Part shown: positions 1-52,300 of the stretch, piece after piece
Layout: each line of letters opens with the position of its first letter
Position numbering within the stretch: the first letter of the stretch is position 1
Assembly (NCBI RefSeq): GCF_030028105.1
Contig: NC_092398.1
Span: forward strand, 28,924,424-28,988,423
DNA: 64,000 nt
DNA from: Mobula birostris
Lineage: Eukaryota
Direction: 5' to 3'
Notes under the pieces: model-generated
The model's database searches: none
What the model was told of the DNA's origin: nothing
The model's input: the letters and a program-made list of their open reading frames with translations, nothing else
Program-made: the position numbers and the translations under genes

Positions 1-1150
1 CGGGAGCCTTAGGACCTAACACCACCAGGTTCAGGAACAGTTATTACCCTTCAATCGACAGCCTCCTGAACCAGTGTGGATAGCTTTACTCACCTCAACA
101 TTGAACTGCCTGGACAATGTAATGGGCAGGAAAAATCATTGCGGCCACAACCCACCCAGCAAACTGCTTTTTCAGAAAACTCCCTTCTGGAAAGCACTAG
201 AGGGCTATTAAAACAAAGACTTAATGCCATCTTAAAGGTTCTTCCCCCAGGCAGTTAATCTGATCAGCCATTCTCGAGACCTCCCCTACCCCCTCTATCT
301 ATTACCTCCATTACTGCACTGTAAACACATCAAACCACTTTTTATAAACATGTTTACATGCTGCTATTTCTGTATTTATGCACATTTTATACCAAATCTA
401 TACTTTAACCTTAAAATTTATATTTTATATAATTCTTCATTCGATATCATTGTTGTTTTCTGTTGCATGACACACCCTGACCAACTCACCACGGCAAATT
501 CCTATCCATATCAACGTACATGGTGCCTCAAGTTGATCCTCGGATGTTGCCTCTTTGAGGCAGTGGTTTCTCTAGGTATTCCCAGTGGTGGAGAGGAGTT
601 TGCCTGTGAGGTACTGAGTTAGGTAGAGTTGACGAGGTATTTTTGTACACACGGCCCCAGATGGAGGCTTGTGGTCCAACTTAACTGTGGTTGCCAACAT
701 CCGGGTGGCAAGTGCCAGCTCGGAAAGGCATCTCAATGCCAGTAGAACTAGCAAAACCAGCACCGCCTGGGGCTGGTGTAGTTCTGCCAGGCCTCCAAAA
801 GAAGGTCAGGTTGAAGATCAGGTTACAGAGTTATACCTCATGGGAACAGGCCATTACCACAATCGAGCACGTCTACAAGGAGAGCTACCACAAGACAGCA
901 GCATCCATCATCAAGGACCCCACTATCCAGGCCGTGCTCTCTTCTCACTGCTGCCATTGGACAGGAGGTGCAGGAGCCTCAGGTCCCACACCACCAGGTT
1001 CAGGAACAGATATTACCCCTCAACCATCAAGCTCCTGAATCGACGTGGATAGCTTCCCTGATGCCAGCACTGAAATGATTCCACAAGCTGTGGACTCACT
1101 TTCAAGGACTCTACACCTCATGTTCTCAATAATCTTTTTTATATACAATT
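1..1150 (+). mobile_element. Rex1/Babar-type LINE 3' fragments (1-110 and ~870-1150)
   Basis: YKESYHKTAASIIKDP-like C-terminal coding remnant and the recurring 'caccaccaggttcaggaacagttattacccctcaaccatcaggctcctgaac' end seen in many copies. Mirrored at 50150-51289. Confidence 0.75.
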
Positions 1151-1239
1151 CGTCTTTTTTACAAATTAGTTTCACAGTGTTTGTCTGTTTATATATATAG
1201 TGTTTCATTAAATTCTTGGTTTATTAAGTTTATTATAGC

Positions 1240-1740
1240 TAGTAATGGTAATGGGGATAAACTCCCACTACCTATTAAATGCTCCCAATGACATGCATCT
1301 CAAACAGCCTCTGACGACCAAATCCAGCTCCTGGCCTTCACGTGTGGCTTAGCTACTAAGTCCAGTGCAACTGTTCCACTGACAGGAGAAGGGGCAAAGG
1401 TGGGTTACTGGTGCCTTAAAACCAGTCCCTTCAAGCAGATGGGGCTTATCTACCGTGGTTGGAAGCTCATCTAGGAGAAGGAAAACCTTGATCTCAAACC
1501 TCTGCTGCATTGTGGCTGTACCCAATCACGGGGAAGGTTTCGGGAGTAAACCCTGAAGAAAAGTCCAGAACTGGAGTCCCTAAGGCAGTCTAAAGTTGAG
1601 TCAACGCTGACTGGCAACTCCTGAGACACCACTGGTGCCAAACTGTATCGGTCTCTGCCGTTCCTTTGGATTCATCAGATGCGCGGAGAGGGGGAGCCTG
1701 TTGCGTAAGCAACAGCTCTCTCTCCGCATTGTACCCCCCT
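1240..1740 (-). mobile_element. Unclassified SINE-like/RTE-related interspersed repeat
   Basis: Independent related copies at 51446-51815 (+) and 63715-64000 (-), plus the arm mirror at 49560-50045. They share 'ttttccttctcctagatgagct' and 'tacagtttggcaccag' motifs. Family assignment is uncertain. Confidence 0.6.
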
Positions 1741-2149
1741 GGCTTAGGCCTAAGAGGTGTGGTGTGAGTCACAACCCAGTCATCCCCTGGGCCACGTTAC
1801 AGCCACAGACTGACCACAGACTGACCATAGACAAAACACAATCCCCCCACAGACGGACTACACTCTGACTACAGCCTGAACACAATCTGACCACAGACTA
1901 AATACAGATTGGCCCCAGGTTGCCGCAGATTCCAGCCAAACAATCCTGGAAACTTGGCACGGATTGGGCTGGATCTCCATGTATAGGCCAGGCTCCTTCC
2001 CAAATCCAATCCCTGGGGCCTGCAACATGCAGAGAGCCCAGCAAACATCCTAGAAGGACAGAGAGACCCTCCCCCACCCCATAGGACTCTCAAAGCCAAC
2101 TTCCTTGGCATCACCAACATCTAGGAATCTAGGATATTCTTAGTCTGTT

Positions 2150-3760
2150 GATGATTAGATCTCTGGCATTCAAGACCAGTGATCCAGAACTAAACAGTAA
2201 GTCCAGATACGAACTACGGAAGGCTATCTTAAAAGCGTTATAAACAATTTCGATTGAGGTTAGAGCCTGAATCAGATGCATGTTAGCTCTGGCAAGGTTT
2301 GCAAGCCATTTCTTCCTACAAAGCAAAACTTAATATGATGAATGGCAGTGATGCTTCACTCTCAGAAGAGCTCAACGCCTTTTAGAAAGAGAGAATAAAA
2401 CTACACCTATGCGAATCCCCGCAGCATCCAGTGACTCTGTGATCCCTGACTCGGAGGCTGACGTCAGAACATATTTGAAGGAGTCAGACCTCACAGAGTT
2501 TCTGGCAAGGCACAGAAAACCCGTCCCAGGCAACGGGCGGGAGTGTTCAAGGATACCTTCAATCTCTCACTGCCGCAGTCGGAGCTTTCCACCTGCTTCA
2601 AAAGGGTGACAATCACACCAGTGCCGAAGAAGAGTAGGGTGAGCTGCTTCAGTGACTATCGCCCAGTAGCACTCATGTCCACAGAGATGAAGTACTTTGA
2701 GAAGTTGGTCATAGCTAGGAGCTATGACCTGTACCCATTGCAACTTGCCTATTGCCACAATAGCTCTACAGCAGATACAATCTCACTAGCTCTCCACTTG
2801 GCCTTAGATCACCTGGACAATAGTAATGCTTACGTCTAGCTGCCACTTCTTTGACCGCAACTCAGCGTTCAACACCATCATACCCTCAGTGTTAATCAAC
2901 AAGCTCCAGAACCTGGCCGTCTGTACCTCCCTCTGCAAAAAGATCCTTACCTTCCTCCCTGGGAGACCACAGTCTGTGCGGATCGGAAATACGATCTCCA
3001 CCTCACTGACAATCAGCACTGGGGCACCTCAGGGATCTGTGCTTAGCCCACTGCTCTACTCTCTCAGCACCCATGACTGTGCAGCTAGCCACAGCTCAAA
3101 TGCCATCTGTATATTTGCCGACAGCACAACTGGTGCTGACAGAGTATAACTTAGTGACGAGGAGACGTACAGGAGTGGGGTAGATCATCTGATTGAGTGG
3201 TGTCCCAGCAGGTTCGTGGTCACAGTGTCAGTAAGACCAAGGAATTGATTGTGGAGTTCAGGAAGGAGAAGTCGAGGGAACACACGCCAGTTCTCATCGA
3301 GGGATCAGAAGTGGAAAGTGTGAGCAGTTTCAAGTTCCTGGGTGCCAACATCTCTGAAGGTCTATCCTGGGCCCAATGTACAGTTACAGAGAAAGCACAA
3401 CAGTGGCTATATTTCATTCAGAGTTTGAGGAGGTCCGGTTTGTCACCAAAGACGCTCGTAAATTCCTGCACTGGTACCATGGAGAGCATGCATCACTGTC
3501 TGGTGTGGGGCTGCCACTGCACAGAAGCAGGAAAAACTCAGCCAACTCCATCATGGGCACGAGCCTCTCTGGCATCCAGGCACCCAGGACAGCTTCTAAA
3601 TGTGACGCCTCAACAAGTCGGCATCCATCACTATGGACCCCCAACATCCAGGACATGCCCTCTTCTCACTGCTACCAACAACGAGGAGGTACAGGAACAT
3701 GAAGGCACCCACTCAATGATTAAGAAACAGCTTCTTCCCCTCCGCCATCAGATTTCTGAA
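2150..3760 (+). mobile_element. Degenerate Rex1/Babar LINE ORF2 (RT) with deletions and frameshifts
   Basis: Fragments MFKDTFNLSL..VPKKSRVSCFSDYRPVAL; [44 protein letters not shown]; KTKELIVEFRK..FKFLG. Mirror at 47520-49140 (-). Confidence 0.9.
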
Positions 3761-3944
3761 TGGAGATTGTATCCATATACAGTACCTCAGTGTTTTCCCC
3801 TCACTTTCTGCACTACGTATTTAATTTATTTTTTATGTGTATGTATTGTAATTTATAATTTTTAATACTTCGTACTGCATTGTACTGCCGCATAACAACA
3901 CATTTTCACAACCGATGCCGGTGATACTAAACCTGATTCTGATC

Positions 3945-4795
3945 CTGATCCTCATTGCCGGGGGGAAAGACTCTGCCATTGTTGGGTGCATCAGCAAGGG
4001 AGATGAGGCTGAGTACAGGGCTACGGTAGGAAACCTTGTCACATGCTGTGAGCAGAATTATCTGCAGCCTGATGTGAAAAAGAGTAAGGAGCTGGTGGTA
4101 GACCAGAGGAGAGCTAAGGTACCGGCAACCCCTGTTTCCATCCAGGGGGTCAGTGTGGACATGGTGGAGGATTACAAATACCTGGGGATACGAATTGACA
4201 ATAAACTGGACTGGTCAAAGAGCACTGAGGCTGTCTACAAGAAGGGTCTCTATTTCCTGAGGAGACTGAGGTCCTTTAACATCTGCCGGACGGTGCTGAG
4301 GATGTTCTACGAGTCTGTGGTGAGCAGTGTGATCATGTTTGCTGTTGTATACTGGGGCTGAGGGTAGCAGACACCAACAGAATCAACAGACTCATTCGTA
4401 AGGCTAGTGATGTTGTGGAGATGGAACTGGACTCTCTGACGGTGTTGTCTGAAAAGAGGATGCTGTCCAAGTTGCATGCCATCTTGGACAATGTCTCCCA
4501 TCCACTACATAATGTACTGGTTGGGCACAGGAGTACATTCAGCCAGAGACTCATTCCACCGAGATGCAGCACAGAGCGTCATAGGAAGTCATTCCTGCCT
4601 GTGGCCATCAAACTCTACAACTCCTCCCTTGGAGGATCAGATACCCTGAGCCAATAGGCTGGTCCTGGACTTACTTCCTGGCATAATTTACATATTACTA
4701 TTTAAATATTTGTGGTTTTATTAGTACTTAATTATTTATGGTGCAACTGTAACGAAAACCAATTTTCCCCCGGGATCAATAAAGTATGACTATGA
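3945..4795 (+). mobile_element. 5'-truncated Rex1/Babar LINE, second subfamily
   Basis: DDSAIVGCIS-like RT end, KSKELVVD, YKYLGIRIDNKLDWS, RHRKSFLPVAIKLYNSS; ends aataaagtatgactatgac. Mirror at 46450-47295 (-). Confidence 0.9.
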
Positions 4796-5059
4796 CACCG
4801 AACGGCACATTGATGTTACTCGAGCCTGTGGGCTGGTCTCATTTCAGCGACATGATGGTCCCATGCACAACAACAAAATTGCTCGTATTATCTTGGGCTG
4901 TTAGTTCACGCCTTGGCCACGGTCCAGGCCATTCGCGAAACCTGGTAACCTGACCCCATCCAGTGTTGGGCTCAGCGATGGAGGGGAAATTCAGAATGTC
5001 TAATCAGTTCAGAATCAGAATCAGAATTACTATCACTGACATACAGTACGCTATGAAAC

Positions 5060-5219
5060 NNNNNNNNNNNNNNNNNNNNNNNNNNNNNNNNNNNNNNNNN
5101 NNNNNNNNNNNNNNNNNNNNNNNNNNNNNNNNNNNNNNNNNNNNNNNNNNNNNNNNNNNNNNNNNNNNNNNNNNNNNNNNNNNNNNNNNNNNNNNNNNNN
5201 NNNNNNNNNNNNNNNNNNN
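5060..5219. other. Assembly gap (160 N)
   Basis: Run of N in the sequence. Confidence 1.
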
Positions 5220-5769
5220 CCATTACATCTACACAGAGGGCTGTAGCAGGAAAGCAGCATACATCATCAGGGTCCCCCACCAGCCAGTCCACACTCTCTT
5301 CTCACTGCTGCCATCAGGAAGAAGGTGCAGGCGGCTCAGCACCCAAACCACCAGATTCAGGAACAGCTATTACCCCTCAATCATCACACTCCACACTCTT
5401 GAACCAAATAGGGTAACTTCAAGTCGTCCCATCACTGAAATGTTCCCACAATCTATGGACTTACTTCAAGGACTTGTCATCTCAGTTCTCGATATTTATT
5501 GCTTGTTTATTAACTATTATTACTTCTTTGTTTTATATTTGCATAGATCCGTGTCCTTTGCACATCGGCCGTTTGTCCGCCCTGTTGGGTGTAGTCTCCA
5601 TTGATTCTACTTCGGTCCTTAGATTTACTGAGTATGCCCGCAAGAAAAGGAATCTCAGAGTTTTGTACGGTGACATCTGTGTAATTTGGTAATAAATTTG
5701 CTTTGTACTTTTTATAAGTATATGTAAGACATTGGAGCAAAATTCGGCCCATCAAGTCTGTTCCACCTT

Positions 5770-7800
5770 TCAATCATGGCTGATTTATTTGCCCTCTCAA
5801 TCCCATTCTCCTTCAGTTTAGTTCAGTTCAGAGTTGCGCCGCTATTTTAAATTATTAATATTTTTAAAAAATATTTATGTTCTTTATCTTCTGTGTTTTT
5901 CTTGTGCTGCATCAGATCTGGGCTAACAATTATTTCCGAAAGACCATAAGACGCAGGAGCAGAATTAGGCCATTCAGCCCATCCAGTCTGCTCTGCCATT
6001 CCATCCGGGATCCCACTCAACCCCATGCACCTGCCCTCTCACCATATCCTTTGATGTCCTGACCGATCAGGAAACGATCAACTTAAGACCATAAGACACA
6101 GGAGCAGAATTAGGCCATTCAGCCTATCGAGTCTGATTTTGTCTCATTTAGAAACGTGGAAACATAGAAAAACTACAGCACAATACAGGCACTTCGGCCC
6201 ACAAAGCTATGCCAAACATACCCTTACTTTAGAACTACCTAGGCTTACCCATAGCCCTCTATTTTTCTAAGCTCCATGTATCCATCCAGGGGTCTCTTAA
6301 AAGACCCTATCGTATCCTCCTCCACCACCGTCGCCGGCAGTCCATTCCACACACTCACCACTCTCTGTGTAAAAATATCTACCCTTGACATCTCCTCTGT
6401 ATCTATTTCCAAGCACCTTAAAGCTATGCCCTCTCATGCTAGCCATTTTAGCCCTGGGAAAAAGCATCTGACTATCCACACAATCAATGCTTCTCATTAC
6501 CTTGGACACCTCTATCAGGTCACCTCTCATCCTCTGTTGCTCCAAGGAAAAAAGGCCGAGTTCACTCAACCTATTCTCATAAGACATGCTCCCAAATCCA
6601 GGCAACATCTTTTAAATCTCCTCTGCACCTTTCTATGGTTTCCACGTCCTTCCTGTAGTAAGGCGACCAGAATTGAGCACAGTAAGTACTCCAAGTGGGG
6701 TCAGCCTGTAGCTGTAACATTACCTCTCGACTCTTAAACTCAGTCCCACTATTGATGAAGGCCAATGCTCCATATGCCTTCTTAACCACAAAGTCAACCT
6801 GCACAGCAGCTTTGAATGTTCTATGGACTCGGACCCCAAGATCCCTCTGATCCTCCAGACTGCCAAGAGTCTTGTCATTAATGCTACATTCTGCCATCAT
6901 ATTTGACCTACCAAAATGAACCACCTCATACTTATCTGGGCTGAACTCCATCTGCCACTTTTCAGCCCAGTTTTAGAGCCTATCAATGTCCCGCTGTAAC
7001 CTCTTCAATGGCATTCAGCAATCTTGAATCTTGAAGATCGAGGAGACAAATAGGATGAGCTAAGTTGGATAACGCGGTCAATGTGGATGTGATGGGCCAA
7101 AGGTTCTGTCCCCCAGCCATGACTCCGTGACCCCTCAGTCTCCCTTATTGCAGGGAAGTAATCCCAGTCTATCCAATCTCTCCTCATAATTTAATCCCTC
7201 CAGTCCTCGTAAATCTGAGCTGTCCTTCTCAATCGAATCACCCATGAAGTATTTGAGAGAAAGTTTCAGTGGCCCCAGTCTGTGACAGATCCCCCACTGA
7301 CGTCCTTCCCCGCAAATCATTTGCCGTGACTGCATCAGTATCCCTTGCTGTGTACACCTGTACTATATGGACATGAGAACATAAACATAGACCATTAGAG
7401 CACAGTGAAGGCCCTTCAGCCCACAATGTGGTGCTGACCCATTAACCTACTCTAAGATCGATCTAACACATAGCCCTCTATTATCCTATCAACCGTGTGC
7501 CTACCTAAATGTTTCTTAAATGCCTCTCAGGTATTTGCCTCCACTACCACCCCTACCTTCCGCTCACCATCTACTCTCTGTGTAAAAAACCTGCCTCTGT
7601 CATCCCTCTATGCTTTCTAGCAATCGATTTAAAATTATGCCACCCACCCTGCCATATTAGCTACTTCCACCCTGGGGAAAAAACCTTTGGCTTCTACACT
7701 GTCCAAAACTCCACCAAATTTTGAGACGTGCAGACTTAGTCACCCAAACCTTCCACTTCCCCATGCAAGTTGTTTATAAAAATCAGCAAGCTCAGAACAG
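5770..7800 (-). mobile_element. Cluster of CR1 LINE 3' fragments and tails
   Basis: KYEVVHFGRSN..DLGVRVH..KKAYGALAFI..YCAQFWSP and RMRGDLIEV..LFPR motifs on the minus strand; 'aagaccataagac' and 'atagaaacatag' tails. Mirror at 40760-42830 (+). Confidence 0.85.
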
Positions 7801-8282
7801 ATCTCTGCGGTACGCCGCTCTCTAGTCACCGACTTACAGGCAGAATACTGCCACCCACTTCCCTCTGTGGGCAAGCCACTTCTGCTTCCTCAAAGCCCAG
7901 CTTTCCTGGGTCACGTGCCTCCTGACTTTGCCGACCACGGGGAACCGTGTCGGTTTACGGACGCTGGAATCTGGAGCGACACTCAAGGCGCCGGGGGATC
8001 TCAGTAGGTCGGGCAGCATATATGGAGATGAACGAGGTAGTCCTAGTGAAGGATCCGGGTCCAAAATGCCGACTGTCCATCTCCCTCCACAGACACTGCC
8101 CGACCTGCCGAGTTCCTCCATCTCCTGTACTTGGAGCTTGCCCATCGACAGCATTCCTTCATGGGAACTTATTTTTTTATTTAATTTGTATTTAGGGGTA
8201 CAACACAGTTAATAGCCCCTTCTGGCTATCGAGTCCGTCCCACCCAATTATACCCAAGTGACCAATTATCCTACTAACCCAT

Positions 8283-8580
8283 TTTTTTTTAGATTAAAGT
8301 CCATCACGAGCCTTGTGGCCTATCAGGCCAGTGTTTATGCCGGTTTCCGTGGCGTGAAGCGACTGAGGATCCGAGACTCCCCCCGCCCAGATAGACGCCA
8401 GTCTATCGCGAGGTTAACCTCCAGCATTTTTGCCCGTACTTATTCTCAGCTGGGTAGACTGGAGCATTGTGTGGTTAAGTGCCTTGCTCAAAGACACACA
8501 CTCTGCCGCAGCCGAGGCTCGAACCCATGACCTTCAGATCGCTAGTCCAACACCCTAACCACTTGGCCATGTGCCACACA
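8283..8580 (-). mobile_element. tRNA-derived V-type SINE, left arm only
   Basis: A box TGGCCAAGTGG and B box GGTTCGAGCC on the minus strand; core 'gagcaaggcacttaacc'; poly-A tail. 12-bp TSD ctactaacccat at 8271-8282 and 8581-8592. Empty site at ~40265 in the right arm. Confidence 0.9.
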
Positions 8581-8793
8581 CTACTAACCCATACGTCTTT
8601 GGAATGGGGAGGAAGCACCCGGACAGATTCACAAACCTCTGGGGAAAAAAAAACAATTTCTCCTCATCTCCCTCCTAAATCGATACCCCAGAATGTCGAG
8701 GCTATGTCTCTTAGTTCTCGTCTCACCTACAATTTTCCTGTCTCTTTTTTTTTGCCCCTGCCTTTCATAAATTTATACACGCAGCTGGGTACT

Positions 8794-9325
8794 TAAAGTG
8801 GCCACTGAGTGTATGTTCATGGTCTTCTGCTGCTGTAGCCCATCCATTTTAAGGTTTGACGTGTTGTGCATTCAGAGATGCTCTTCTGCACACCACTGTT
8901 GTAACGTGTGGTTATTTGAGTTACTGTCACCTTCCTGTCAGTTTGAACCAGTCTGGCCATTCTCCTCTGACCTCTCTCATTAACAAAGCGTTTTCACCCA
9001 CAGAACTGCCGCTTACTGGGTGCATTTTGTTTCTTGCACCATTCTCTGTAAACTCTAGAGGTTGTTGTGCATGAAAATCCCAGGAGGTCAGTAGCTACTG
9101 AGGTACTCAAACCACCCCGTCTGGCACCAACAATCATTCCACAGTCAAAGTTACTTAGATCCTGTTCCTTCCCCATTCTGTTGTTTGGTTTGAACAACAA
9201 CTGAACCTCTTGCCCGTGTCTGCACACTTTTATGTATTGAGTTGCTGCCACATGATTGGCTGATTAGATATTTATATTAAGAAGCAGGTGTACTGGTGTG
9301 CCCAATAAAGTGGCAACTGAATGTA
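8794..9325 (-). mobile_element. Non-autonomous Tc1/mariner-like element
   Basis: Inverted ends aaagtggccactgagtgta; internal MGKxxDLSxFDxGMIVGARRGG..ATDLLGFS..SRVYREW transposase N-terminus remnant. Mirror at 39539-40066. Confidence 0.8.
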
Positions 9326-9544
9326 AATTAGTGAGGTGGCCTCTAATGCTTCACTTGGCAGAGAATTCCACAGCTTCACTAATATCTGTGAGAAGCAGTT
9401 CCTCCTCATCTCAGTCCTAAATCCGGTTTTAGTCTCACTCACCAGTGGATAGATCTTTCCTGACTCTGTCTTTACATATTCCTTTCATAATCTCATCTTC
9501 GCGTACAACTTCCTCTGTCAGCTTCTCTCCCTCTCCCTTTCATA

Positions 9545-9800
9545 ATTTTGTATGAATGTATAAGATTCCAGCCTTTCACCTTTCCTAATCACCTGGCTCC
9601 CTATCACCTCCTCCCCTTCCCTGCCCACCTTTTTTTCATTCTGCATTCTTCCCCCTTCCTTTCCAGGCCTGAAGGAGGGTCTCGGCCCAAAACGTTGACA
9701 GTTTTATTAATTTCCATAGGTGCTGCCTGACCTACTGAGTTTCTCCAGCATTTTGTGTGAGTTGCTCTGGATTTCCAACGTCTGCAGACCTTCTCATGTT
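9545..9800 (+). mobile_element. Penelope-like element 3' fragment with degenerate hammerhead motif
   Basis: cctgaaggagggtctcggcccaaaacgttgacag followed by 'gctgcctgacctactgagtttctccagcattttgtgtg'. Related pieces at 12870-13030, 17990-18160, 26200-26560, 37020-37200, 39070-39330, 51840-52150 and 57640-57920. Confidence 0.65.
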
Positions 9801-9849
9801 TCCGACTCCAAGGAAATTAAGTGTGGAAGGGTGGGGTTTGTAAGTTTTG

Positions 9850-30705: not shown

Positions 30706-30719
30706 ACAGTGGATGCAAT

Positions 30720-41000: not shown

Positions 41001-43150
41001 GAGGTAAATACCTGAGGGGCATTTAAGAAACATTTAAGTAGGCACATGTTTGATAGGATAATAGAGGGCTATGTGTAAGATTGATCTTAGAGTTGGTTAA
41101 TGGGTCAGCACAACATTGTGGGCCGAAGGGCCTTCACTGTGCTCTCATGGTCTATGTTTATGTTCTCAAGTCCACATGGTACAGGTGTACACAGCGACGG
41201 ATACTGATGCAGTCACGGCAAACGATTTGCGGGGAAGGACGTCAGTGAGGGACCTGTCACCGACTGGAGCCACTGAAACTTTCTCTCAAATACTTAATGG
41301 GTGATTCGATTGAGAAGGACAGCTCAGATTCACGAGGACTGGAGGGATTAAATTATGAGGAGAGATTGGATACACTGGGACCACTTTCCCTGCAGTGAGG
41401 GAGACTGAAGGGTGATGGAATCATAGCTAGGGGAACAGAACCTTTCGCCCATCACATCCACTTTGACCGTGTTACCCAACTTAGCTCATCCTATTTGTCT
41501 CCCCGATCTTCAAGATTCAAGATTGCTGAATGCCATTGAAGAGGTTACAGCGGGACATTGATAGGATGCAAAACTGGGCTGAAAAGTGGGAGATGAGTTC
41601 AACCCAGATAAGTGTGAGGTGGTTCATTTTGATGGGTCAAATATGATGGCAGAATATAGCATTAATGGCAAGACTCTTGGCAGTTTGGCGGATCAGAGGG
41701 ATCTTGGGGTTCGAGTCCATAGAACATTCAAAGCTGCTTCGCAGGTTGACTTTGTGGTTAAGAAGGCATATGGAGCATTGGCCTTCATCAATCATGGGAC
41801 TGAGTTTAAGAGTCGAGAGGTAATGTTACAGCTACAGGTAGACCCCACTTGGAGTACTTACTGTGCTCAATTCTGGTCGTCTCATTACAGGAAGGACATG
41901 GAGAACATAGAAAGGGTGCAAAGAAGATTTACAAGTGTGTTGCCTGAATTGGGGAGCATGCCTTATGAGAATAGGTTGGGTGAACTTGGCCTTTGCTCCT
42001 TCGAGCGACAGAGGCTGGGAGGTGAACTGATAGAGGTGCCCAAGATAATGAGAGGCATTGATCGTGTGGATAGTCAGAAGCTTTTTCCTAGGGCTGAAAT
42101 GGCTAGCATGAGAGGGTATAGTTTTAAGGTGCTTGGAAGTAGATACAGAGGAAATATCAGCGGTAAGTTTTTTTTACACAGAGAGTGGTGAGTGCGTGGA
42201 ATGGGCTGCCCGCGGCAGTGGTGGGGGCGGAAACGATAAAGTCTTTTAGGAGGTTCCTGGATAGATACATGGAGCTTAGAAAAATAGAGGGCTATGGGTA
42301 AGCCTAGGTAGTTCTAAGGTAAGGGTATGTTTGGTACAGCTTTGTGGGCCGAAGTGCCTCTATTGTGCTGTAGTTTTTCTACGTTTCTATGTTTCTAAAT
42401 GAGACGAAATCAGACTCGATAGGCTGAATGGCCTAATTCTGCTCCTGTGTCTTATGGTCTTAAGAAGGCAGAAGTTGATCGTTTCCTGATCGGTCGGGGC
42501 ATAAAAGGATATGGTGAGAGGGCAGGTGCATGGGGTTGAGTGGGATCCCAGATGGAATGGCAGAGCAGACTCGATGGGCTGAATGGCCTAATTCTGCTCC
42601 TGCGTCTTATGGTCTTTCGGAAATAATTGTTAGCCCAGATCTGATGCAGCATAAGAAAAACACAGAAGATAAAGAACATAAATATTTTTTTTAAAATATT
42701 AATAATTAAAAATAGCGGCGCAACTCTGAACTGAACTAAACTGAAGGAGAATGGGGTTGAGACGGCAAATAAATCAGCCATGATTGAAAGGTGGAACAGA
42801 CTTGACGGGCCGAAGTTTGCTCCAATGTCTTACATATACTTATAAAAAATACAAAGCAAATTTATTACCAAATTACATAGATGTCACCATACAAAACTCT
42901 GAGATTCCTTTTCTTGCGGGCATACTCAGTAAATCTAAGAACCAAAGTAGAATCAATGGAAGACCGCACCCAACAGGGCGGACAAACGACCGATGTGCAA
43001 AAGACAAGGATCTATGCAAATATAAAACAAAGAAGTAATAATAGTTAATAAAGAAGCAATAAATATCGAGAACTGAGATGACGAGTCCTTGAAGGTAAGT
43101 CCATAGATTGTGGGAACATTTCACTGATGGGGCGACTTGAAGTTACCCCA

Positions 43151-45859
43151 TTTTTTTAAATTTCAAAATATACTTTATTCAAAAATAAATATATACAATA
43201 AACCATTCAATAACTTTTCATCCTTTACATACGTTTCCATTATAGTCAGTACATATCCGTATTTATAGCCACCCACGTGGCACTCCAGCAGTTCAGCCTA
43301 GCATATCATTGTTGAGGGGTATACTCCCCGCCCTCCCGCGGGTGGAGAAACCTAAACCGTGGTCCTTCCCCACCGGGCCCTTGCGGTGGCTGCACCGAGT
43401 TTCAGTGCGTCCCTCAGCACATACTCCTGCAGCCGAGAATGTGCCAGTCGGCAGCATTCTGCCACGGACATCTCCATGTGCTGGTAGACCATCAAGTTTC
43501 GGGCTGACCAAAGAGCGTCTTTCACCGAGTTGATGATCTGCCAGCAGCACCGGATGTTGGTCTCCGTGTGCGTCCCCGGGAACAGCCCGTAGATCAGAGA
43601 GTCCTCTGTTACGCAGCTGCTGAGGATGAAACGTGACACTAGCCCGTCCATCCTCCTCCACACCCTCTGCGAACTGGCAGTGTGCAAAGAGGTGGGTCAC
43701 AGACTCCTCCTCACTGCAGTACTCCCGTGGGCAGTCGGGTGCGGAGACGACGTTCCGGGCGTACAGGAGGGCTCTGACTGGGAGGACCCCTCTCACCGCC
43801 AGCCAGGCGAGGTCTTGGTGCCTGTTGGTGAGATCTGGCGATGAGGCATTTTGCCAGATGAACTGGACAGTCTGCTCAGGGAAACACCCCACAGTGTCCA
43901 TCACGTCCTTCTCCTGCAGTGCCTGCAGGACACTTCGTGCCGACCACTGCCTGATGGCCCTGTGGTCAAAGGCGTTCTCCTGGAAGAACTTTGCTACGTA
44001 GGACAGGTATGCCGGCAACGACCAGCTGACTGGGGCGTTGCGCGGGAGTGGGGCCAGACCCATCCTTCGTAGCCAGGGCGACAGGTAGAACCTGGGCACA
44101 TAGTGGTACTTGGTGCCCACATACCTGGGTTCTACACACAACCTGATGCAACCACATACGAAGCTGGCCATCAGGGTGAGGGCGACATTGGGGACGTTCT
44201 TGCCCCCGTTGTCCAGGGACTTGTGCATGACGATCCGTCTCACCCACTCCATCTTGGATCCCCAGACGAATCTGAAGACAGCCCGGGTGATTTCCGAGCT
44301 GTAGGAGCGGGGGACGGGCCAGACCTGCGCCAAGTACAGCAGCCCTGAGAGCACTTCACACCTGATGACCAGGTTCTTGCCCGTTATCGACAGGGAGCGC
44401 CCTCCCCACAGTCCCAGTTTCTGTTTCACCTTGGCAGTCCGCTCCTGCCAGTTCTTCTTGCATGCCTCAGCCCCTCCGAACCAGATCCCCAACACCTTCA
44501 CGTGGTCAGACCTGGTGGTGAAGGGGACGCTGGATCGGTCGAGCCAGTTGCCGAAGAGCATGGCTTCGCTCTTCGTGCGGTTGACCCTGGCCCCCGACGC
44601 TAGCTCGAACTGTTCGCAGGTGCCAATCAACCTGCGAACTGACCTCGGATCAGAGCAGAAGATGGTGACGTCGTCCATGTACAGGGAGGTTTTCATTTGG
44701 GTCCCTCCACTGCCTGGCAACGTCACCCCTCTTATGCCCTCATCCCTCCTGATGGCTTCCGCAAAGGGTTCTATGCAGCAGACAAACAAGACAGGGGAGA
44801 GGGGACAGCCCTGCCTGACTCCAGACCTGATGGGGAAGCTGTCTGTTCCCCACCCGTTGACCTGGACTGCACTATGGATGTCTGTGTAGAGCAGTCTAAT
44901 CCAATTCCGGATTCCCTCCCCAAGTCCCATTTTGGAGAGCACGTCCGCCATGTACGTGTGCGATATCCTGTCGAAGGCTTTCTCCTGGTCCAAGCTGACC
45001 AGGTAGGCGTCCACCCCCCTGTCCTGCACGTAGGCGATGGTGTCCCTCAGCAGCGCGAGGCTGTCTGAGATCTTCCTGCCCGGTACAGCACAGGTTTGGT
45101 CCGGGTGGATCACCTGTCCCAGAGCAGACTTGACCCTGTTGGCGATAGCCTTGGACAGGATCTTGTAATCCACATTCAGGAGAGAGATGGGTCTCCAATT
45201 TCTAATGTCCTCCCTTTCCCCCTTCTGCTTGTAGATGAGGGTGATGATGCCCTTCCTCATGGACTCAGACATACTGTCGGCCAGAAGCATAGCGTTGTGC
45301 ACTTCCAGCAGGTCTGGGCCCATCCAGTTCCACAGAGCCGAGTACAACTCAGTTGATAAGCCGTCACTTCCGGGAGTCTTACCCGACCCAAAGGAACGGA
45401 TGAAGCCTGTCAGCTCGTCCAGGGTCAGTGGCTGATCCAGACTCTCCCGCTTGCAGTCGTCTAAGACCTGCGTGATAGACGACAGGAAGTTGCGGGAGGC
45501 TGTGGATTCTGTGGCCTTTTCGTCGTACAGACCGACATAGAAGGACTTGCAGATCCTCAGTATGTCGGTCTGCGAGGACGCGACTGAGCCGTCCTCTTCC
45601 TTAAGGTTGTGGATCACAGAGCTCCCCCTGTGCACCTTTTGGAAGAAGAAGCGTGAGCACGTCTCGTCCTGCTCCACGGTTTGGACCCTTGATCGGAAGA
45701 TGATCTTGGAGGATTCGGTGGCGAGGTGCTGGGCTTGCCGGCCCTTCACCTCTCGCAGTTCCTCCCTGACATCTACCCCCTTCGACTGCAGAAGGAGAAG
45801 TTGCTGCAACTCTGTCTGGAGTTTACGCAGTTCCCTCTGCTCCTGCCTTGCCTTCTGGA
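43151..45859 (-). mobile_element. Tx1-clade (L1 group) non-LTR retrotransposon, 5'-truncated, nearly intact RT
   Basis: 838-aa ORF with ETCSRFFFQK, WRPISLLNVDYKILSK, LDQEKAFDR, GVRQGCPLSP, YMDDV and CPREYCSEEESVTHLFAHC zinc knuckle. One frameshift near 43667, then ..LKLGAATARARWGRTTV*. Poly-A tail; TSD tacccca(ttt) at 43144-43150 and 45860-45866. Confidence 0.97.
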
Positions 45860-45866
45860 TACCCCA

Positions 45867-46339
45867 TTTTTTTTTTCCAAAAATACTTTATTCAGAAATA
45901 TTACAAAATAAAAATAATTACATACAGGAAAAGAAAACCATTCGTTGACTGTGAGTCCTTATTCAATACAGTTAATAACAATAAAAATTTTGCGTTGACT
46001 CTGTTCATTTACAAATGAAAGATGTTTACAGTAAATCATGCGTTTACTCTCAACCCTTGGTCAAGAGTTAAGACTTATTAACAATCAAAATTTTCAACAA
46101 TAAAGGCAGGCAATGGCTCTAATACTTTCCCAAATTAACAATTCCACCCACTCCTTGGGCACCATGTTGATTATCTGTCCACACCGCTGATGAGGGTAGG
46201 TCTCCTCTCCACCCAACATCTCCCCCTCCTACGGGTGATGAACGTTAAACTGTGGTCCTTCCCCACCGGGCCTTCGCGGTGGCTGCACCAAGTTTGAGTG
46301 CATCCCTCAGAACGTACTCCTGCAGACGAGAGTGTGCCA
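45867..46339 (-). mobile_element. Second, short Tx1 3' fragment (different subfamily)
   Basis: LAHSRLQEYVLRDALKLGAATAKARWGRTTV*, then a ~380-bp 3'UTR that does not align with the neighbour's, aataaa and an A10 tail. Confidence 0.9.
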
Positions 46340-49300
46340 GTTCAAGAGTGTGGAGTGTGATGATTGAGGGGTAATAGCTGTTCCTGAACCTGGTGGTGTG
46401 GGTGCTGAGCCGCCTGCACCTTCTTCCTGATGGCAGCAGTAACATCAACGTGCTGTTTGGTGTCATAGTCATACCTTATTGATCCCGAGGAAAATTGGTT
46501 TTCGTTACAGTTGCACCATAAATAATTAAATAGTAATAAAACCTCAAATAGTTAAATAGTAATATGTAAATTATGCCAGGAAATAAGTCCAGGACCAGCC
46601 TATTGGCTCAGGGTGTCTGACCCTCCAAGGGAGGAGTTGTAAAGTTTGATGGCCACTGGCAGGAATGACTTCCTATGACGCTCTGTGCTGTATCTCGGTG
46701 GAATGAGTCTCTGGCTGAATGTACTCCTGTGCCCAACCAGTACATTATGTAGTGGATGGGAGACATTGTCCAAGATGGCATGCAACTTGGACAGCATCCT
46801 CTTTTCAGACATCACCGTCAGAGAGTCCAGTTCCATCCCCACAACATCACTGGCCTTACGAATGAGTCTGTTGATTCTGTTGGTGTCTGCTACCCTCAGC
46901 CTGTTTCCCAGCACACAACAGCAAACATGATTGCACTGGTCACCACAGACTCGTAGAACATCCTCAACCCCGTCCGGCAGATGTTAAAGGACCTCAGTCT
47001 CCTCAGGAAATAGAGACGGCTCTGACCCTTCTTGTAGACAGCCTCAGTGCTCTTTGACCAGTCCAGTTTATTGTCAATTCGTATCCCCAGGTGTTTGTAA
47101 TCCTCCACCACGTCCACAATGACCCCCTGGATGGAAACAGGGGTCGCCGGTACCTTAGCTCTCCTCTGGTCTACCACCAGCTCCTTACTCTTTTTCACAT
47201 CAGGCTGCAGATAATTATGCTCACAGCATGTGACAAGGTTTCCTACCGTAGCCCTGTACTCAGCCTCATCTCCCTTGCTGATGCACCCGACAATGGCAGA
47301 GTCTTTCCCCCCGGCAATGAGGATCAGGATCAGAATCAGGTTTAATATCACCGGCATCGGTTGTGAAAATGTGTTGTTATGCGGCAGTACAATGCAGTAC
47401 GAAGTATTAAAAATTATAAATTGCAATAAGTACACATAAAAAATAAATTAAATACGTAGTGCAGAAAGTGAGGGGAAAATACTGAGGTACTGTATATGGA
47501 TACAATCTCCATTCAGAAATCTGATGGCGGAGGGGAAGAAGCTGTTTCTGAATCATTGAGTGGGTGCCTTCATGTTCCTGTACCTCCTCGCTGTTGGTAG
47601 CAGTGAGAAGAGGGCATGTCCTGGGTGTTGGGGGTCCTTGGTGATGGATGCCGACTTGTTGAGGCGTCACATTTAGAAGCTGTCCTGGGTGCCTGGATGC
47701 CAGAGAGGCTCGTGCCCATGATGGAGTTGGCTGAGTTTTTCCCGCTCCTGTGCAGTGGCAGCCCCACACCAGACGGTGATGCATGCTCTCCATGGTACCA
47801 GTGCAGGAATTTACGAGCGTCTTTGGTGACAAACCGGACCTCATCAAACTCTGAATGAAATATAGCCACTGTTGCGCTTTCTCTGTAACTGTATATTGGG
47901 CCCAGGATAGACCTTCGGAGATGTTGGCACCCAGGAACTTGAAACTGCTCGCACTTTCCACTTCTGATCCTTCGATGAGAACTGGCGTGTGTTCCCTTGA
48001 CTTCCCCTTCCTGAACTCCACAATCAATTCCTTGGTCTTACTGACACTGTGACCACGAACCTGCTGGGACACCACTCAACCAGATGATCTACCCCACTCC
48101 TGTACATCTCCTCGTCACGAAGTTATACTCTGTCAGCACCAGTTGTGCTGTCGGCAGATATACAGATGGCATTTAATCTGTGCCGAGCCGCACAGTCATG
48201 GGTGCTGAGAGAGTAGAGCAGTGGGCTAAGCACAGATCCCTGAGGTGCCCCAGTGCTGATTGTCAGTGAGGTGGAGATCGTATTTCCGATCCGCACAGAC
48301 TGTGGTCTCCCAGGGAGGAAGGCAAGGATCCATTTGCAGAGGGAGGTACAGAGGCCCAGGTTCTGGAGCTTGTTGATTAACACTGAGGGTATGATGGTGT
48401 TGAACGGTGAGTTGCGGTCAAAGAAGTGGCAGCTAGACGTAAGCATTACTATTGTCCAGGTGATCTAAGGCCAAGTGGAGAACCAGGGAGATCGTATCTG
48501 CTGTAGACCAATTGTGGCAATAGGCAAGTTGCAATGGGTACAGGTCCTTGCTTAGGCAGGAGTTGCTCCTAGCTATGACCAACCTCTCAAAGTACTTCAT
48601 CTCTGTCGACGTGAGTGCTACTTGGAGATAGTCAATGAAGCAGCTCACCCTGCTCTTCTTACGCACTGGTGTGATTGTCACCCTTTTGAAGCAGGTGGAA
48701 AGCTCCGACTGCGGCAGTGAGAGATTGAAGGTATCCTTGAACACTCCCGCCCGTTGCCTGGGACGGGTTTTCTGTGCCTTACCAGAAACTCTGTGAGGTC
48801 TGACGCCTTGAAAGATGTTCTGACCTCAACCTCCGAGACAGGGATCACAGAGCCACTGGATGCGCCGGGATTCGCACAGGTGTAGTTTTATTCCCTTTTT
48901 CTAAAAGGCGTTGAGCTCTTCTGAGAGTGAAGCATCACCGCCATTCATCATATTAAGTTTTGCTTTGCAGGAAGGAATGGCTTGCAAACCTTGCCAGAGC
49001 TAACATGCATCTGATTCAGGCTCTAACCTCAATCGAAATTGTTTATAACGCTTTTAAGATAGCCTTCCGTAGTTCGTTTCTGGACTTACTGTTTAGTTCT
49101 GGATCACTGGTCTTGAATGCCAGAGATCTAATCATCAACAGACTAAGAATATCCTAGATTCCTAGATGTTGGTGATGTCAAGGAAGTTGGTTTTGAGAGT
49201 TTTATGGGGTGGGAGAGGGTGTCCCTGTCCTTCTAGGACGTTTGCTGGGCTCTCTGGATGTTGCAGACCCCAGGGATTGGATTTGGGAAGGAGCCTGGCC

Positions 49301-52300
49301 TATACTTGGAGATCCAGCCCAATCCGTGCCAAGTTTCCAGGATTGTTTGGCTGGAATCTGCGGCAACCTGGGGCCAATCTGTATTTAGTCTGTGGTCAGA
49401 TTGTGTTCAGGCTGTAGTCAGAGTGTAGTCTGTCTGTGGGGAGATTGTGTTTTGTCTGTGGTCAGTCTATGTTCAATCTGTGCTAAGTCTGTGGTCAATC
49501 TGTGGCTGTAACGTGGCCCAGGAGATGACTGGGTTGTGACTCACACCACATCTATTAGGCCTAAACCAGGGAGGTACAATGCGGAGAGAGAGCTGTTGCT
49601 CACGCAACAGGCTCCCCCTCTCCGCGCATCTGATGAATCCAAAGGAACGGCAGAGACCGATACAGTTTGGCACCAGCGTTGACTCAACTTTAGACTGCCT
49701 TAGGGACTCCAGTTCTGGACTTTTCTTCAGGGTTTACTCCCGAAACCTTCCCCGTGATTGGGTACAGCCACAATGCAGCAGAGGTTTGAGATCAAGGTTT
49801 TCCTTCTCCTAGATGAGCTTCCAACCACGGCAGATAAGCCCCATCTGCTTGAAGGGACTGGTTTTAAGGCACCAGTAACCCACCTTTGCCCCTTCTCCTG
49901 TCGGTGGATCAGTTCCACTGGACTTAGTAGCTAAGCCACACGTGAAGGCCAGGAGCTGGATTTGGTCGTCAGAGGCTGTTTGAGATGCATGTCATTGGGA
50001 GAATTTAATAGGTAGTGGGAGTTTATCCCCATTACCATTACTAGCTATAATAAACTTAATAAACCAAGAATTTAATGAAACACTATATATAAACAGACAA
50101 ACACTATCAAACTAATTTGTAAAAAAGATGAATTGTATATAAAAAAGATTATTGAGAACATGAGTTGTAGAGACCTTGAAAGTGAGTCCACAGCTTGTGG
50201 AATCATTTCAGTGCTGGCATCAGTGAAGCTATCCATGTTGATTCAGGAGCTTGATGGTTGAGGGGTAATAACTGTTCCTGAACCTGGTGGTGTGGGACCT
50301 GAGGCTCCTGCACCTCCTGCTCAATGGCAGCAGTGAGAAGAGAGCACGGCCTGGATAGTGGGTTCCTTGATGATGGATGCTGCTGTCTTGTGGTAGCTCT
50401 CCTTGTAGACGTGCTCGATTGTGGTAATGGCCTGTTCCCATGAGGTATAACTCTGTAACCTGATCTTCAACCTGACCTTCTTTTGGAGGCCTGGCAGAAC
50501 TACACCAGCCCCAGGCGGTGCTGGTTTTGCTAGTTCTACTGGCATTGAGACGCCTTTCCGAGCTGGCACTTGCCACCCGGATGTTGGCAACCACAGTTAA
50601 GTTGGATCACAAGCCTCCATCTGGGGCCGTGTGTGACCCTGTACAAAAATACCTCGTCAACTCTACCTAACTCAGTACCTCACAGGCAAACTCCTCTCCA
50701 CCACTGGGAATACCTAGAGAAACCACTGCCTCAAAGAGGCAACATCCGAGGATCAACTTGAGGCACCATCTACGTTGATATGGATAGGAATTTGCCGTGG
50801 TGAGTTGGTCAGGGTGTGTCATGCAACAGAAAACAACAATGATATTGAATAAAGAATTATATAAAGTATAAATTTCAAGGTTAAAGTACAGATTTGGTAT
50901 ATAATGTGTATAAATACAGAAATAGCAGCATGTAAACATGTTTATAAAAAGAGGTTTGATGTGTTTACAGTGCACTAATGGAGGTAATAGATAGAAGGGG
51001 TGGGGGAGGTCACTAGAATGGCTGATCAGATTAACTGCCTGGGGGAAGAAACTTTAAGATGGCATTAAGTTTTTGTTTTAATAGCCCTCTTGTGCTTTCC
51101 AGAAGGGAGTTTTCTGAAAAAGCAGTTTGCTGGGTGGGTTGTGGCCGTAATGATTTTTTCCTGCCCACTACTTTGTCCAGGCAGTTCAATGTTAAGGTGA
51201 GTAAAGCTATCCACACTGGTTCAGGAGGTTGTCGATTGAAAGGTAATAACTGTTCCTGAACCTGGTGGTGTTCGGTCCTCAGGCTCCCGAACTTCATTTC
51301 CAGTGGTAGCAGTTTCATCCCCAAAACTAACTACTGAGCCGTCTTTGGAAGCATATTCTTCCTGAAATGCAGAGATTAGAACTGTACACAGTGCAACACA
51401 TGCAAAATGGTGGAGAAACTCGGCAAGTTAGTCAGAATCTATAGTAGTAGCAGGCAGCCATCAATCCCGAGGGATCATGGGTTTGCGTCTCTAGTGGACT
51501 GTGTCCTCTCCAGGGCGGGAGGATTTGAAGAACCGACAGTTGCCCATGCAGTGGGTTCCCCCTCTCCACGTCACTGATGTAGTCCAAGGGAAGGGCAAAC
51601 GCCGATTAGCTTGGCACCATCGTCATCGTAGAGGTTACCAGAGTGAAGTTGTAAACTACATCAAACTGACTTAGGGATCCCAGCTCCAGATCTTTTCTTC
51701 AGGGTTTACTCCTGAAGCTATTCCCATGGGTGGGTGTGGCCGTAAGGCAGCGAAGGTTTCAAATCAGAGTTTTCCTTCTCCTAGACGGGCTGCCGTCCAA
51801 GGCTAACGAGTCCCGCCTGCCCGAGTCAGAACCCATAGGGGAGGATAAAGAGTCGATGTTTCAGACCCAGACACTTCATCAGGACTGGAAAGGAAAGTGG
51901 GGGGTGGGGGCGGGGGTGTTATTTGCAGAATCCAGAATAAGAAGGTAAGTGGAGGGGGAGATGTACAAGCTGGAAGGTGATAGGTGAGACTAGGTGAGGG
52001 GGTTGAAGTAAGAAGCTGGGGAGGTGATAAAGGGCTGAAGAAGACGGAATCTGATAGGGGAGGATCATGGGATAAAGGGAAGTAGGAGGGGCACCAGGGT
52101 AGGTGATGGGTAGGTAAGGAGAAGAGGTAAGTGGGGAACCAGATTGAGGAATGGAAAAAGGGAACTGAATTGAATTGACTTTATTACTTACATACTTTAC
52201 ATACATGAGGAGTAAAAATCTTTACGTTGCATCTCTATCTAAGTGTGCATTGTGCAATCATAGTAATTTATCATAAATAGATGTAATATAGAGTACACTC

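What the first reader, a model, noticed from the sequence alone, without database searches (positions are those of the whole stretch)
1..51289. Large diverged palindrome (arms at least 14.4 kb ancestral, 11.4 kb spacer) next to an MHC-type gene
Seen: 1-21498 is the inverted copy of 32930-51289. Removing left-only sequence (V-SINE ~310, CR1 1181, tandem gain ~5150, 4821-5306) leaves ~14.37 kb. Removing right-only sequence (Tx1 pair ~3200, ~775 bp retained) leaves ~14.39 kb. Divergence of ~5% plus TSD-flanked arm-specific insertions shows the copies are old and not homogenised by gene conversion. Inference: birth-and-death duplication in an immune gene cluster, and a substrate for recurrent inversion of the spacer.
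Basis: seen in the sequence. Interest (0 to 1): 0.75.

Follow-up and report, generated by a model that had tools for sequence, protein, structure and literature searches.

The report
Old inverted duplication near ray MHC-W gene
Two stretches of about 20 kb lie head to head around an 11.4-kb spacer in a ray genome, next to a W-category MHC gene: a real, old, gene-free inverted duplication made mostly of transposon debris, and an ordinary kind of structure.

Summary
Window 1-21498 is the inverted copy of 32930-51289, around an 11,431-bp spacer.

The left arm runs off the window start, so the true arm length is unknown.

The gap at 5060-5219 sits in a non-coding, left-only stretch (4821-5303). 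The right arm is continuous across that point, which supports the order and orientation of the two left contigs. It says nothing about what the gap holds.

One correction matters. Divergence is not a uniform ~5%. It is 3.4% from the window start to about 6140 and 8.3% from there to the inner boundary (likelihood-ratio statistic 143.6). The step is not at the gap. Two ~400-bp patches are nearly identical between arms. So "never homogenised" is too strong: the outer part was converted or added later.

I found no MHC exon or other non-transposon domain in the arms or spacer. The only MHC exons lie 9.8 kb beyond the visible right arm.

An assembly artefact is unlikely.

This is a new member of a known kind and of low interest. 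Other first readers of this scan noted further palindromes and an inverted duplication around WA exons elsewhere in this genome.

The parts
1..21498 (+). Left arm of the inverted duplication. It runs off the window start, so it is only the visible part.
   Evidence: Self-BLAST chain against 51289-32930.
32930..51289 (-). Right arm, the inverted copy of the left arm.
   Evidence: Block-wise global alignments give 91-96.6% identity for the single-copy blocks.
21499..32929 (.). Spacer of 11,431 bp. It matches the arms only at dispersed-repeat level (65-81%). It is rich in CR1 pieces.
   Evidence: Both junctions are sharp.
1..6140 (+). Outer, younger divergence stratum. It is 3.4% different from R51289 to about R42410.
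   Evidence: Maximum-likelihood change point at L6140, with a 2-lnL support interval of 6047-6292 and a likelihood-ratio statistic of 143.6. A change point at the gap is 14.7 lnL worse. Non-CpG divergence is 2.5-2.8% here against 5.5-8.4% further in.
6141..21498 (+). Inner, older divergence stratum, 8.3% different from the right arm.
5060..5219 (.). Assembly gap (N) inside the left-only stretch.
4821..5303 (+). Left-only stretch, most likely deleted from the right arm. It is bounded by a 3-nt ACT microhomology.
   Evidence: A LINE-tail copy (5225-5494) reads through the right edge of this stretch without a break, and the right arm's copy is cut there.
8283..8580 (-). Left-only tRNA-derived SINE with A and B boxes and an A8 tail. 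Its 12-bp TSD, CTACTAACCCAT, lies at 8271-8282 and 8581-8592.
   Evidence: The empty site in the right arm is near 40267-40279.
14000..15171 (-). Left-only 5'-truncated CR1 with an open 398-aa reverse-transcriptase reading frame and a (TAGAAACA)n end. Its 9-bp TSD, GGATAGACA, lies at 13991-13999 and 15172-15180.
   Evidence: Pfam RVT_1 at 2e-15.
10380..20926 (+). Left-arm tandem array of about 2.3 units against one in the right arm. It was made by unequal crossing-over between same-orientation CR1 fragments.
   Evidence: Direct repeats are. The chimeric CR1 junctions at 11443-11842 and 16553-16952 share the same crossover point. A CR1 reading frame runs across the 10380 junction. Unit copies are 5-10% apart.
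43154..46339 (-). Right-only L1/Tx1-like LINE insertion with a poly(A) end, an open 838-864-aa reverse-transcriptase reading frame, and a short second tail piece at 46222-46398.
   Evidence: Pfam RVT_1 at 6.5e-38 and zf-RVT at 4.7e-8. Junctions are. tblastn is. The nearest Atlas clusters are LINE-1 ORF2-type.
35777..36532 (-). Right-only 756 bp. Both left unit copies lack it at the same junction, so it was most likely deleted in the left arm before the tandem amplification.
20950..21498 (-). 5'-truncated CR1 tail that forms the inner end of the left arm.
   Evidence: An nhmmer profile of CR1 copies from the window matches from the boundary outward only.
32930..33500 (+). The same CR1 tail, forming the inner end of the right arm.
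30850..32929 (+). Degraded CR1 5' part in the spacer (ORF1 esterase-like region, endonuclease, linker motif). It ends exactly at the right-arm boundary.
   Evidence: Weak Pfam hits to Lipase_GDSL_2 and Exo_endo_phos. Translations, and comparison with the neighbouring CR1 5' part at 28536-30734, are.
61050..62855 (-). The adjacent MHC-type (WA) gene remnant, outside the visible arms. The Ig-like exon is at 61050-61325 and the membrane-distal domain exon at 62526-62855.
   Evidence: Pfam C1-set at 2.3e-11. phmmer finds elasmobranch class II-like proteins, with a best E-value of 7.9e-19. tblastn places the two exons.

Best explanation
This is a genuine, old inverted segmental duplication in a transposon-rich intergenic stretch of a ray genome, beside a W-category MHC alpha-type gene. 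It is a palindrome with a unique 11.4-kb spacer. It appears to have no function of its own.

Shown:
- The arms are collinear and inverted.
- Each arm later gained or lost sequence. The left arm gained a SINE, a CR1 and a CR1-mediated tandem amplification. The right arm gained an L1/Tx1-like LINE and lost about 483 bp.
- The arms have two ages of divergence, 8.3% in the inner part and 3.4% in the outer 6.1 kb or more.

Inferred order of events:
1. An inverted duplication formed.
2. The left arm lost 749 bp.
3. Soon afterwards, unequal crossovers among CR1 fragments expanded the left arm.
4. The SINE and CR1 inserted.
5. The outer part of one arm was copied onto the other. This was either long-tract arm-to-arm conversion or an outward extension of an older, shorter palindrome.
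6. The right arm then took the LINE insertion and the deletion.

How the first duplication arose is not resolved. A replication template switch or fold-back is the most likely class of event. The inner boundary falls at the 5' end of a CR1 fragment, which hints at a transposon-guided switch.
For: - Inverted collinear chain with sharp inner junctions and no gap at either junction.
- Clean empty sites and TSDs for the arm-specific SINE and CR1.
- Intact long reverse-transcriptase reading frames in the arm-specific LINEs, which suggests they are younger than the duplication.
- Chimeric CR1 junctions with one shared crossover point in the tandem array.
- Tandem unit copies that have diverged 5-10% from each other. 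An assembler cannot create that.
- A change point at L6140 with a likelihood-ratio statistic of 143.6. CpG sites, non-CpG sites and indel density all shift in the same direction.
- Near-identical patches at L519-917 (0.75%) and L12461-12835 (1.3%).
- Arm divergence of 3.4-8.3% is 17-40 times the nucleotide diversity measured in a shark, pi = 0.002 (PMC10587355). The arms are therefore not two alleles.
- No MHC exon in the arms or spacer. Only transposon domains turned up in the 30 ORFs scanned against Pfam.
Against: - There is only one assembly and no reads, so depth and junction-spanning support are untested.
- The left arm is cut by the window edge, so its extent and any genes further out are unseen.
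- The two strata could partly reflect local mutation-rate differences. The inner part is richer in CR1 fragments.
- Exon detection in a vertebrate with these tools is weak. Short exons of unknown families could be missed.
- Which inner junction is ancestral could not be decided.
Confidence: 0.8

Rival explanations
1. Assembly artefact. One arm, or the contig left of the gap (1-5059), is a mis-placed copy of the other haplotype and not a second genomic copy.
For: One scaffold gap lies inside the left arm. The less diverged stratum includes the contig left of that gap. MHC-linked regions of cartilaginous fish can carry very old allelic lineages (title of PMC8010645, seen; I did not read the paper).
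Against: - The low-divergence stratum continues about 900 bp past the gap into the main contig. A change point at the gap is 14.7 lnL worse.
- Both inner junctions lie in continuous sequence.
- The arms differ by 3.4-8.3% plus kilobase-scale insertions with TSDs, against pi = 0.002 in a shark.
- The left arm holds its own diverged tandem copies.
- The contig left of the gap carries the undeleted form at 4821, unlike the right arm.
Confidence: 0.05
2. A single duplication of uniform age with no later conversion. The two divergence levels would reflect a locally higher mutation rate in the CR1-rich inner part.
For: The highest divergence (9-10.8%) is in the CR1-dense stretch 6141-8282. Divergence varies within the inner blocks.
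Against: - The step is abrupt, within about 250 bp.
- The step is also seen at non-CpG sites (2.5-2.8% against 5.5-8.4%) and in indel density, 2.1 per kb in the outer 4.8 kb against 4.3-5.9 per kb in most inner blocks, though only 2.8 in 8578-10380.
- The part of unit B outside its CR1 junction fragment is still 5.4-7.1% diverged.
Confidence: 0.15
3. A gene-bearing, selectively maintained palindrome of the sex-chromosome ampliconic type, whose arms carry paired WA genes further out.
For: The arm runs off the window. An earlier first-reader note (s1-146084) places a WA gene 9.4-13.1 kb before the window start. That is the mirror position of the in-window WA exons, which lie 9.8-11.6 kb beyond the right arm's visible end.
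Against: Arm identity is 91.7-96.5%, not above 99.9%, so there is no ongoing homogenisation. No gene was found in 40 kb of visible arms. The in-window WA has only two recognisable exons, and an earlier follow-up called it broken (s1-145105). The upstream WA is described as deeply divergent.
Confidence: 0.1

Closest known systems
Inverted segmental duplications (inverted low-copy repeats) of vertebrate genomes
   Same: Two inverted copies longer than 10 kb at 90% identity or more, around a unique spacer. The copies are decorated with copy-specific transposon insertions. In principle they are a substrate for inversion of the spacer by non-allelic homologous recombination.
   Different: Repeats known to drive recurrent inversions are usually 97% identical or more, with long identical tracts (my own knowledge). 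Here identity is 91.7-96.5% and the longest identical run is 187 bp.
Sex-chromosome ampliconic palindromes (human Y P1-P8 and X palindromes)
   Same: The arm-spacer-arm geometry and the kilobase scale. There is also evidence for at least one past arm-to-arm homogenising event.
   Different: Those keep arm identity above 99.9% by continuing gene conversion and carry expressed genes in the arms (my own knowledge). This one has drifted to 3.4-8.3% divergence and shows no gene in the visible arms.
Birth-and-death duplication blocks of MHC gene families
   Same: It lies in a cluster of W-category MHC genes. That family was described in PMC8713811 and is reported there as head-to-head WA/WB pairs. 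Neighbouring copies appear decayed.
   Different: The duplicated stretch seen here contains no MHC exon. Whether the arms reach the WA genes cannot be seen from this window.
Replication-based inverted duplications (fold-back inversions; DUP-TRP/INV-DUP mediated by inverted repeats)
   Same: An inverted copy separated from its source by a unique spacer, with sharp junctions. One boundary coincides with a repeat edge (the CR1 5' end).
   Different: After about 8% divergence, no junction microhomology or second breakpoint can be demonstrated, and the outer junction is outside the window.

Membership tests
Inverted segmental duplication / palindrome with spacer | Two copies in opposite orientation, collinear over more than 1 kb | tested here: met
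   A chain of blocks covers 1-21498 against 51289-32930.
Inverted segmental duplication / palindrome with spacer | Sequence identity of 90% or more (the usual segmental-duplication threshold) | tested here: met
   Identity is 96.6% in the outer stratum and 91.7% in the inner stratum over 14,413 aligned sites. Only the recombinant tandem copies fall to 87-89%.
Inverted segmental duplication / palindrome with spacer | The spacer is not itself part of the repeat | tested here: met
   21499-32929 matches the arms only through dispersed CR1 fragments at 65-81%.
Inverted segmental duplication / palindrome with spacer | Both copies are present in the genome and not only in the assembly (read depth, spanning reads) | not testable with these tools
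   No reads are available. Indirect sequence arguments only. A protein search with a spacer ORF beside the left junction found no independent data.
Homogenised ampliconic palindrome (Y/X-chromosome type) | Near-identity of the arms (above 99.9%) maintained by ongoing arm-to-arm gene conversion | tested here: not met
   Divergence is 3.4% and 8.3%. Only two ~400-bp patches are near-identical.
Homogenised ampliconic palindrome (Y/X-chromosome type) | Protein-coding genes carried in mirror-image pairs in the arms | tested here: not met
   In the visible arms, only transposon domains turned up in the ORFs scanned and no MHC exon. Sequence beyond the window was not seen.
MHC birth-and-death duplication unit | The duplicated block contains a member of the MHC gene family | tested here: inconclusive
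   None within 1-51289. The WA exons at 61050-62855 lie outside the visible arm. The arm is truncated by the window start.
MHC birth-and-death duplication unit | Some duplicated copies decay to pseudogenes | not tested
   An earlier follow-up (s1-145105) called the adjacent WA broken. Here only its two exons were located.

The most novel reading that the evidence does not exclude
The palindrome is much larger than the window shows, and its arms reach mirror-image WA genes on both sides. One lies 9.4-13.1 kb upstream of the window and the other at 61-63 kb in the window. The two divergence strata would then record stepwise outward growth or partial re-homogenisation of a palindrome. With the other inverted duplication noted around WA exons 3.58 Mb away, inverted duplication would be the main way the W-category MHC family expanded in this ray.
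Probability: 0.3. Interest if true: 0.45.

Novelty: new member of a known kind. Interest (0 to 1): 0.2.

Why it matters
On its own it matters little. It is one more diverged inverted segmental duplication in transposon-rich vertebrate DNA.

It has some value as a dated record of local events: duplication, CR1-mediated unequal crossing-over, partial re-homogenisation, and then recent LINE activity. It also has some value as a warning for anyone annotating or assembling the W-category MHC region of this ray, where paralogous arms, a gap and tandem copies could mislead read mapping.

If the arms prove to include the WA genes, it would show how this recently described MHC category multiplies.

Tried and rejected
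- Haplotig or mis-join at the gap as the cause of the low-divergence stratum. Rejected, because the change point is about 900 bp inside the main contig and a change point at the gap is 14.7 lnL worse.
- An older split of the C2 copies before the palindrome formed. This was suggested by 12-15% divergence. It disappeared once the chimeric CR1 junction was excluded.
- MHC exons hidden in the arms or spacer. tblastn with four elasmobranch class II-like proteins and the window's own WA exons found only the two known exons.
- Pfam scans of 30 ORFs. Only RVT_1, zf-RVT, the LINE-tail artefact ALKBH8_N, weak esterase and endonuclease hits, and C1-set in the WA exon.
- Rfam over the whole window and ARAGORN. 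No hits. Rfam at relaxed threshold on the SINE also gave nothing.
- Deciding which inner junction is ancestral. Sensitive BLAST of the spacer edges, an alignment to CR1 copies, an nhmmer profile and a search for a TSD around the boundary CR1 tail were all inconclusive.
- Independent sequence for the left junction. A protein search with the spacer ORF 21560-22075 found nothing.
- Reaching the upstream sequence through annotated WA homologues. The hits were all from other species.
- The scan's own notes searched by sequence were blank, which means nothing.
- Dating. The only direct elasmobranch mutation rate found is 7e-10 per site per generation with a wide interval, from a shark and not a ray. 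It would put the arms 25 and 59 million generations apart. I give no date in years.
Full report

The window has one N run, at 5060-5219. A self-comparison with blastn gives a collinear inverted chain between 1-21498 (L) and 51289-32930 (R):

| Left | Right |
|---|---|
| L1-4820 | R51289-46438 |
| L5304-5404 | R46440-46340 (98%) |
| L5406-8282 | R43153-40265 |
| L8578-10380 | R40279-38490 |
| L11443-13513 and L16553-18644 | R38614-36533 |
| L13515-13999 | R35776-35299 |
| L18646-21498 | R35776-32930 |

The largest block scores 7689 bits, so chance is not an issue. Homology stops within one base at 21498 and 32930. At the other end it runs right up to window position 1, so the arms continue beyond the window. 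The spacer is 11,431 bp (21499-32929). It matches the arms only through dispersed CR1 fragments at 65-81% identity.

**2. The gap, tested first**

The gap lies in a stretch that only the left arm has, 4821-5303. In the right arm the homologues of L4820 and L5304 are adjacent (R46438/46440). The paralogue therefore independently supports the order and orientation of the two left contigs.

A LINE-tail copy (5225-5494; alignment) reads through the right edge of the left-only stretch without a break. The right arm's copy is cut at that point, and the stretch is bounded by a 3-nt ACT repeat. So the right arm lost this sequence, and the left arm did not gain it.

Because the right arm lacks the stretch, it cannot tell us what the gap holds or how long it is. 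The figure of 483 bp rests on the nominal 160 N. The ORF that the ORF listing draws across the gap (4963-5604) reads through N. Neither flank matches anything but repeat copies at DNA level, and the 32-aa stretch before the gap has no Pfam hit. Reading frame is therefore not a meaningful question here. I did not look up or fill the gap.

**3. Arm-specific sequence**

- *Left only, 8283-8580.* A tRNA-derived SINE with A and B boxes and an A8 tail, inserted in minus orientation. It has a 12-bp target-site duplication (TSD), CTACTAACCCAT. The right arm has a clean empty site. The family name V-SINE could not be tested.
- *Left only, 14000-15171.* A 5'-truncated CR1 with an open 398-aa reverse-transcriptase frame (Pfam RVT_1), a (TAGAAACA)n end and a 9-bp TSD, GGATAGACA. 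The site is empty both in the right arm and in the paralogous left unit.
- *Right only, 43154-46339.* An L1/Tx1-like LINE with a poly(A) end and an open 838-864-aa frame (RVT_1 and zf-RVT; LINE-1 ORF2-type neighbours). A short second tail piece sits on top of it.
- *Right only, 35777-36532.* Both left unit copies share the same junction here. This is most simply a 749-bp deletion in the left arm before that arm was amplified.

Removing arm-specific sequence leaves about 14,419 bp on the left and 14,418 bp on the right (my arithmetic from the coordinates).

**4. The tandem gain in the left arm**

The left arm holds about 2.3 copies of a unit that the right arm has once. The unit junctions at 11443-11842 and 16553-16952 are chimeras of two CR1 fragments that lie 4.7 kb apart in the right arm. 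Both have the same switch point. The third junction, at 10380, falls inside a continuous CR1 reading frame.

This is unequal crossing-over between same-orientation CR1 pieces. It agrees with another first-reader note (s1-146401).

With the chimeric piece excluded, unit copies differ by K2P 0.05-0.10, about the same as the inner arm divergence. The amplification therefore followed the inverted duplication closely.

**5. Divergence is not uniform**

Global alignments of the blocks give K2P 0.035 for L1-4820, and 0.062-0.092 for the single-copy inner blocks.

Over 14,413 aligned sites, a single change-point model places the step at L6140. The 2-lnL support interval is 6047-6292. Divergence is 3.45% on the outer side and 8.25% on the inner side, with a likelihood-ratio statistic of 143.6.

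| Measure | Outer | Inner |
|---|---|---|
| Non-CpG divergence | 2.5-2.8% | 5.5-8.4% |
| CpG-context divergence | 16-24% | 19-32% |
| Indel events per kb | 2.1 (L1-4820) | 4.3-5.9 in most blocks; 2.8 in 8578-10380 |

Forcing the step to the assembly gap costs 14.7 lnL. The young stratum is therefore not simply "the other contig".

Two patches are far more alike than their surroundings. L519-917 differs at 0.75% and L12461-12835 at 1.3%. The second patch is also reduced in the third copy.

The simplest reading is that the outer part was made alike again after the first duplication. That could be long-tract arm-to-arm conversion, or a later event that extended an older, shorter palindrome outwards. 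A few short conversion tracts or slowly changing elements sit on top of that. The right-arm LINE insertion and the 483-bp deletion lie in the young stratum, so they are the latest events.

**6. What is in the arms and spacer**

Pfam scans of 30 ORFs gave only transposon domains. The window's own reverse-transcriptase ORFs, used as tblastn queries, mark CR1 fragments throughout both arms and the spacer. A roughly 310-bp repeat family is the 3' tail of the LINE at 2462-3870. Rfam and ARAGORN found nothing.

The MHC-type gene is real but lies outside the visible arms. The exon at 61050-61325 is an Ig C1-set domain. The exon at 62526-62855 matches class II-like proteins of sharks and skates. With those proteins as queries, no other MHC-like exon appears anywhere in 1-60000. 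The W-category family is described in PMC8713811.

**7. The inner boundary**

In both arms, homology begins within about 10 bp of the 5' end of a truncated CR1 tail (nhmmer).

On the right side, the spacer ends with a degraded CR1 5' part in the same orientation. It has an ORF1 esterase-like region, an endonuclease and a linker motif, SFFRYI, that ends at 32928. The reverse-transcriptase region that would normally lie between the linker and the tail is absent.

I could not decide which junction is ancestral, and I found no TSD. A transposon-guided template switch is an attractive explanation, but it is unproven. The chance that a random breakpoint falls this close to a repeat edge in such DNA is perhaps several per cent, by my rough estimate.

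**8. Artefact or real?**

The arguments against a false haplotype duplication are:
- Both junctions lie in continuous sequence.
- Divergence of 3.4-8.3% is 17-40 times the nucleotide diversity reported for a shark, pi = 0.002 (PMC10587355).
- There are kilobase-scale insertions with TSDs and matching empty sites.
- One arm holds tandem copies that have themselves diverged by 5-10%.

Read depth and spanning reads remain the decisive test, and they are not available here.

**9. Consequences**

Inversion of the spacer by recombination between the arms is possible in principle. However, the longest identical run is 187 bp and only 12 runs reach 100 bp, so this is a poor substrate. Nothing in the spacer looks orientation-sensitive.

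**10. Extent**

Earlier first-reader notes place a WA gene 9.4-13.1 kb before the window start (s1-146084). That is the mirror of the in-window WA exons, which lie 9.8-11.6 kb beyond R51289. Other notes record an inverted duplication around WA exons 3.58 Mb away (s1-146391) and further palindromes elsewhere in this genome. These are unchecked leads. WA genes are dense here, so a chance mirror position is not unlikely.

**Verdict**

The structure is an ordinary old inverted segmental duplication with an instructive but unsurprising history.

Noticed in passing
window 519-917 and 12461-12835 (paralogue 17590-17960): These patches of about 400 bp differ between the arms by only 0.75% and 1.3%, against 3.6-7% in their flanks. 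The second patch is also reduced in the third unit copy, and it coincides with a LINE-tail copy (12461-12771). They could be short conversion tracts or a slowly changing element.
   Followed up: partly
window 32911-32945 and 21485-21540: The palindrome's inner boundary coincides with the 5' end of a CR1 tail in both arms. On the right it abuts the linker region of another CR1 5' part in the same orientation. The left spacer also has a 7-nt inverted repeat, CTGATGC ... GCATCAG, about 30 nt from the boundary.
   Followed up: partly
window 28536-32929: Two stacked CR1 5' portions (endonuclease and linker at 28536-30734; ORF1 esterase-like region, endonuclease and linker at 30850-32929). No reverse-transcriptase stretch was found in either. 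This is unusual, because most CR1 copies in the window are 3' fragments.
   Followed up: partly
window 43293-45887 (-) and 14100-15293 (-): Long open reverse-transcriptase reading frames (838-864 aa in the L1/Tx1-like element, 398 aa in the CR1) sit in arm-specific insertions. This suggests fairly recent LINE activity in this genome.
   Followed up: no
window 52445-52796 and 52868-53227: Two minisatellites (28-bp unit x 12.5 copies; 37-bp unit x 7.9 copies) lie 1.2 kb beyond the visible end of the right arm.
   Followed up: no
window 61502-61648: A 36-bp tandem repeat (4.1 copies) lies in the intron between the two WA exons.
   Followed up: no
window 5030-5059: A (CAGAAT)n microsatellite sits directly at the left edge of the assembly gap. 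It is a plausible reason why the assembly broke there.
   Followed up: no
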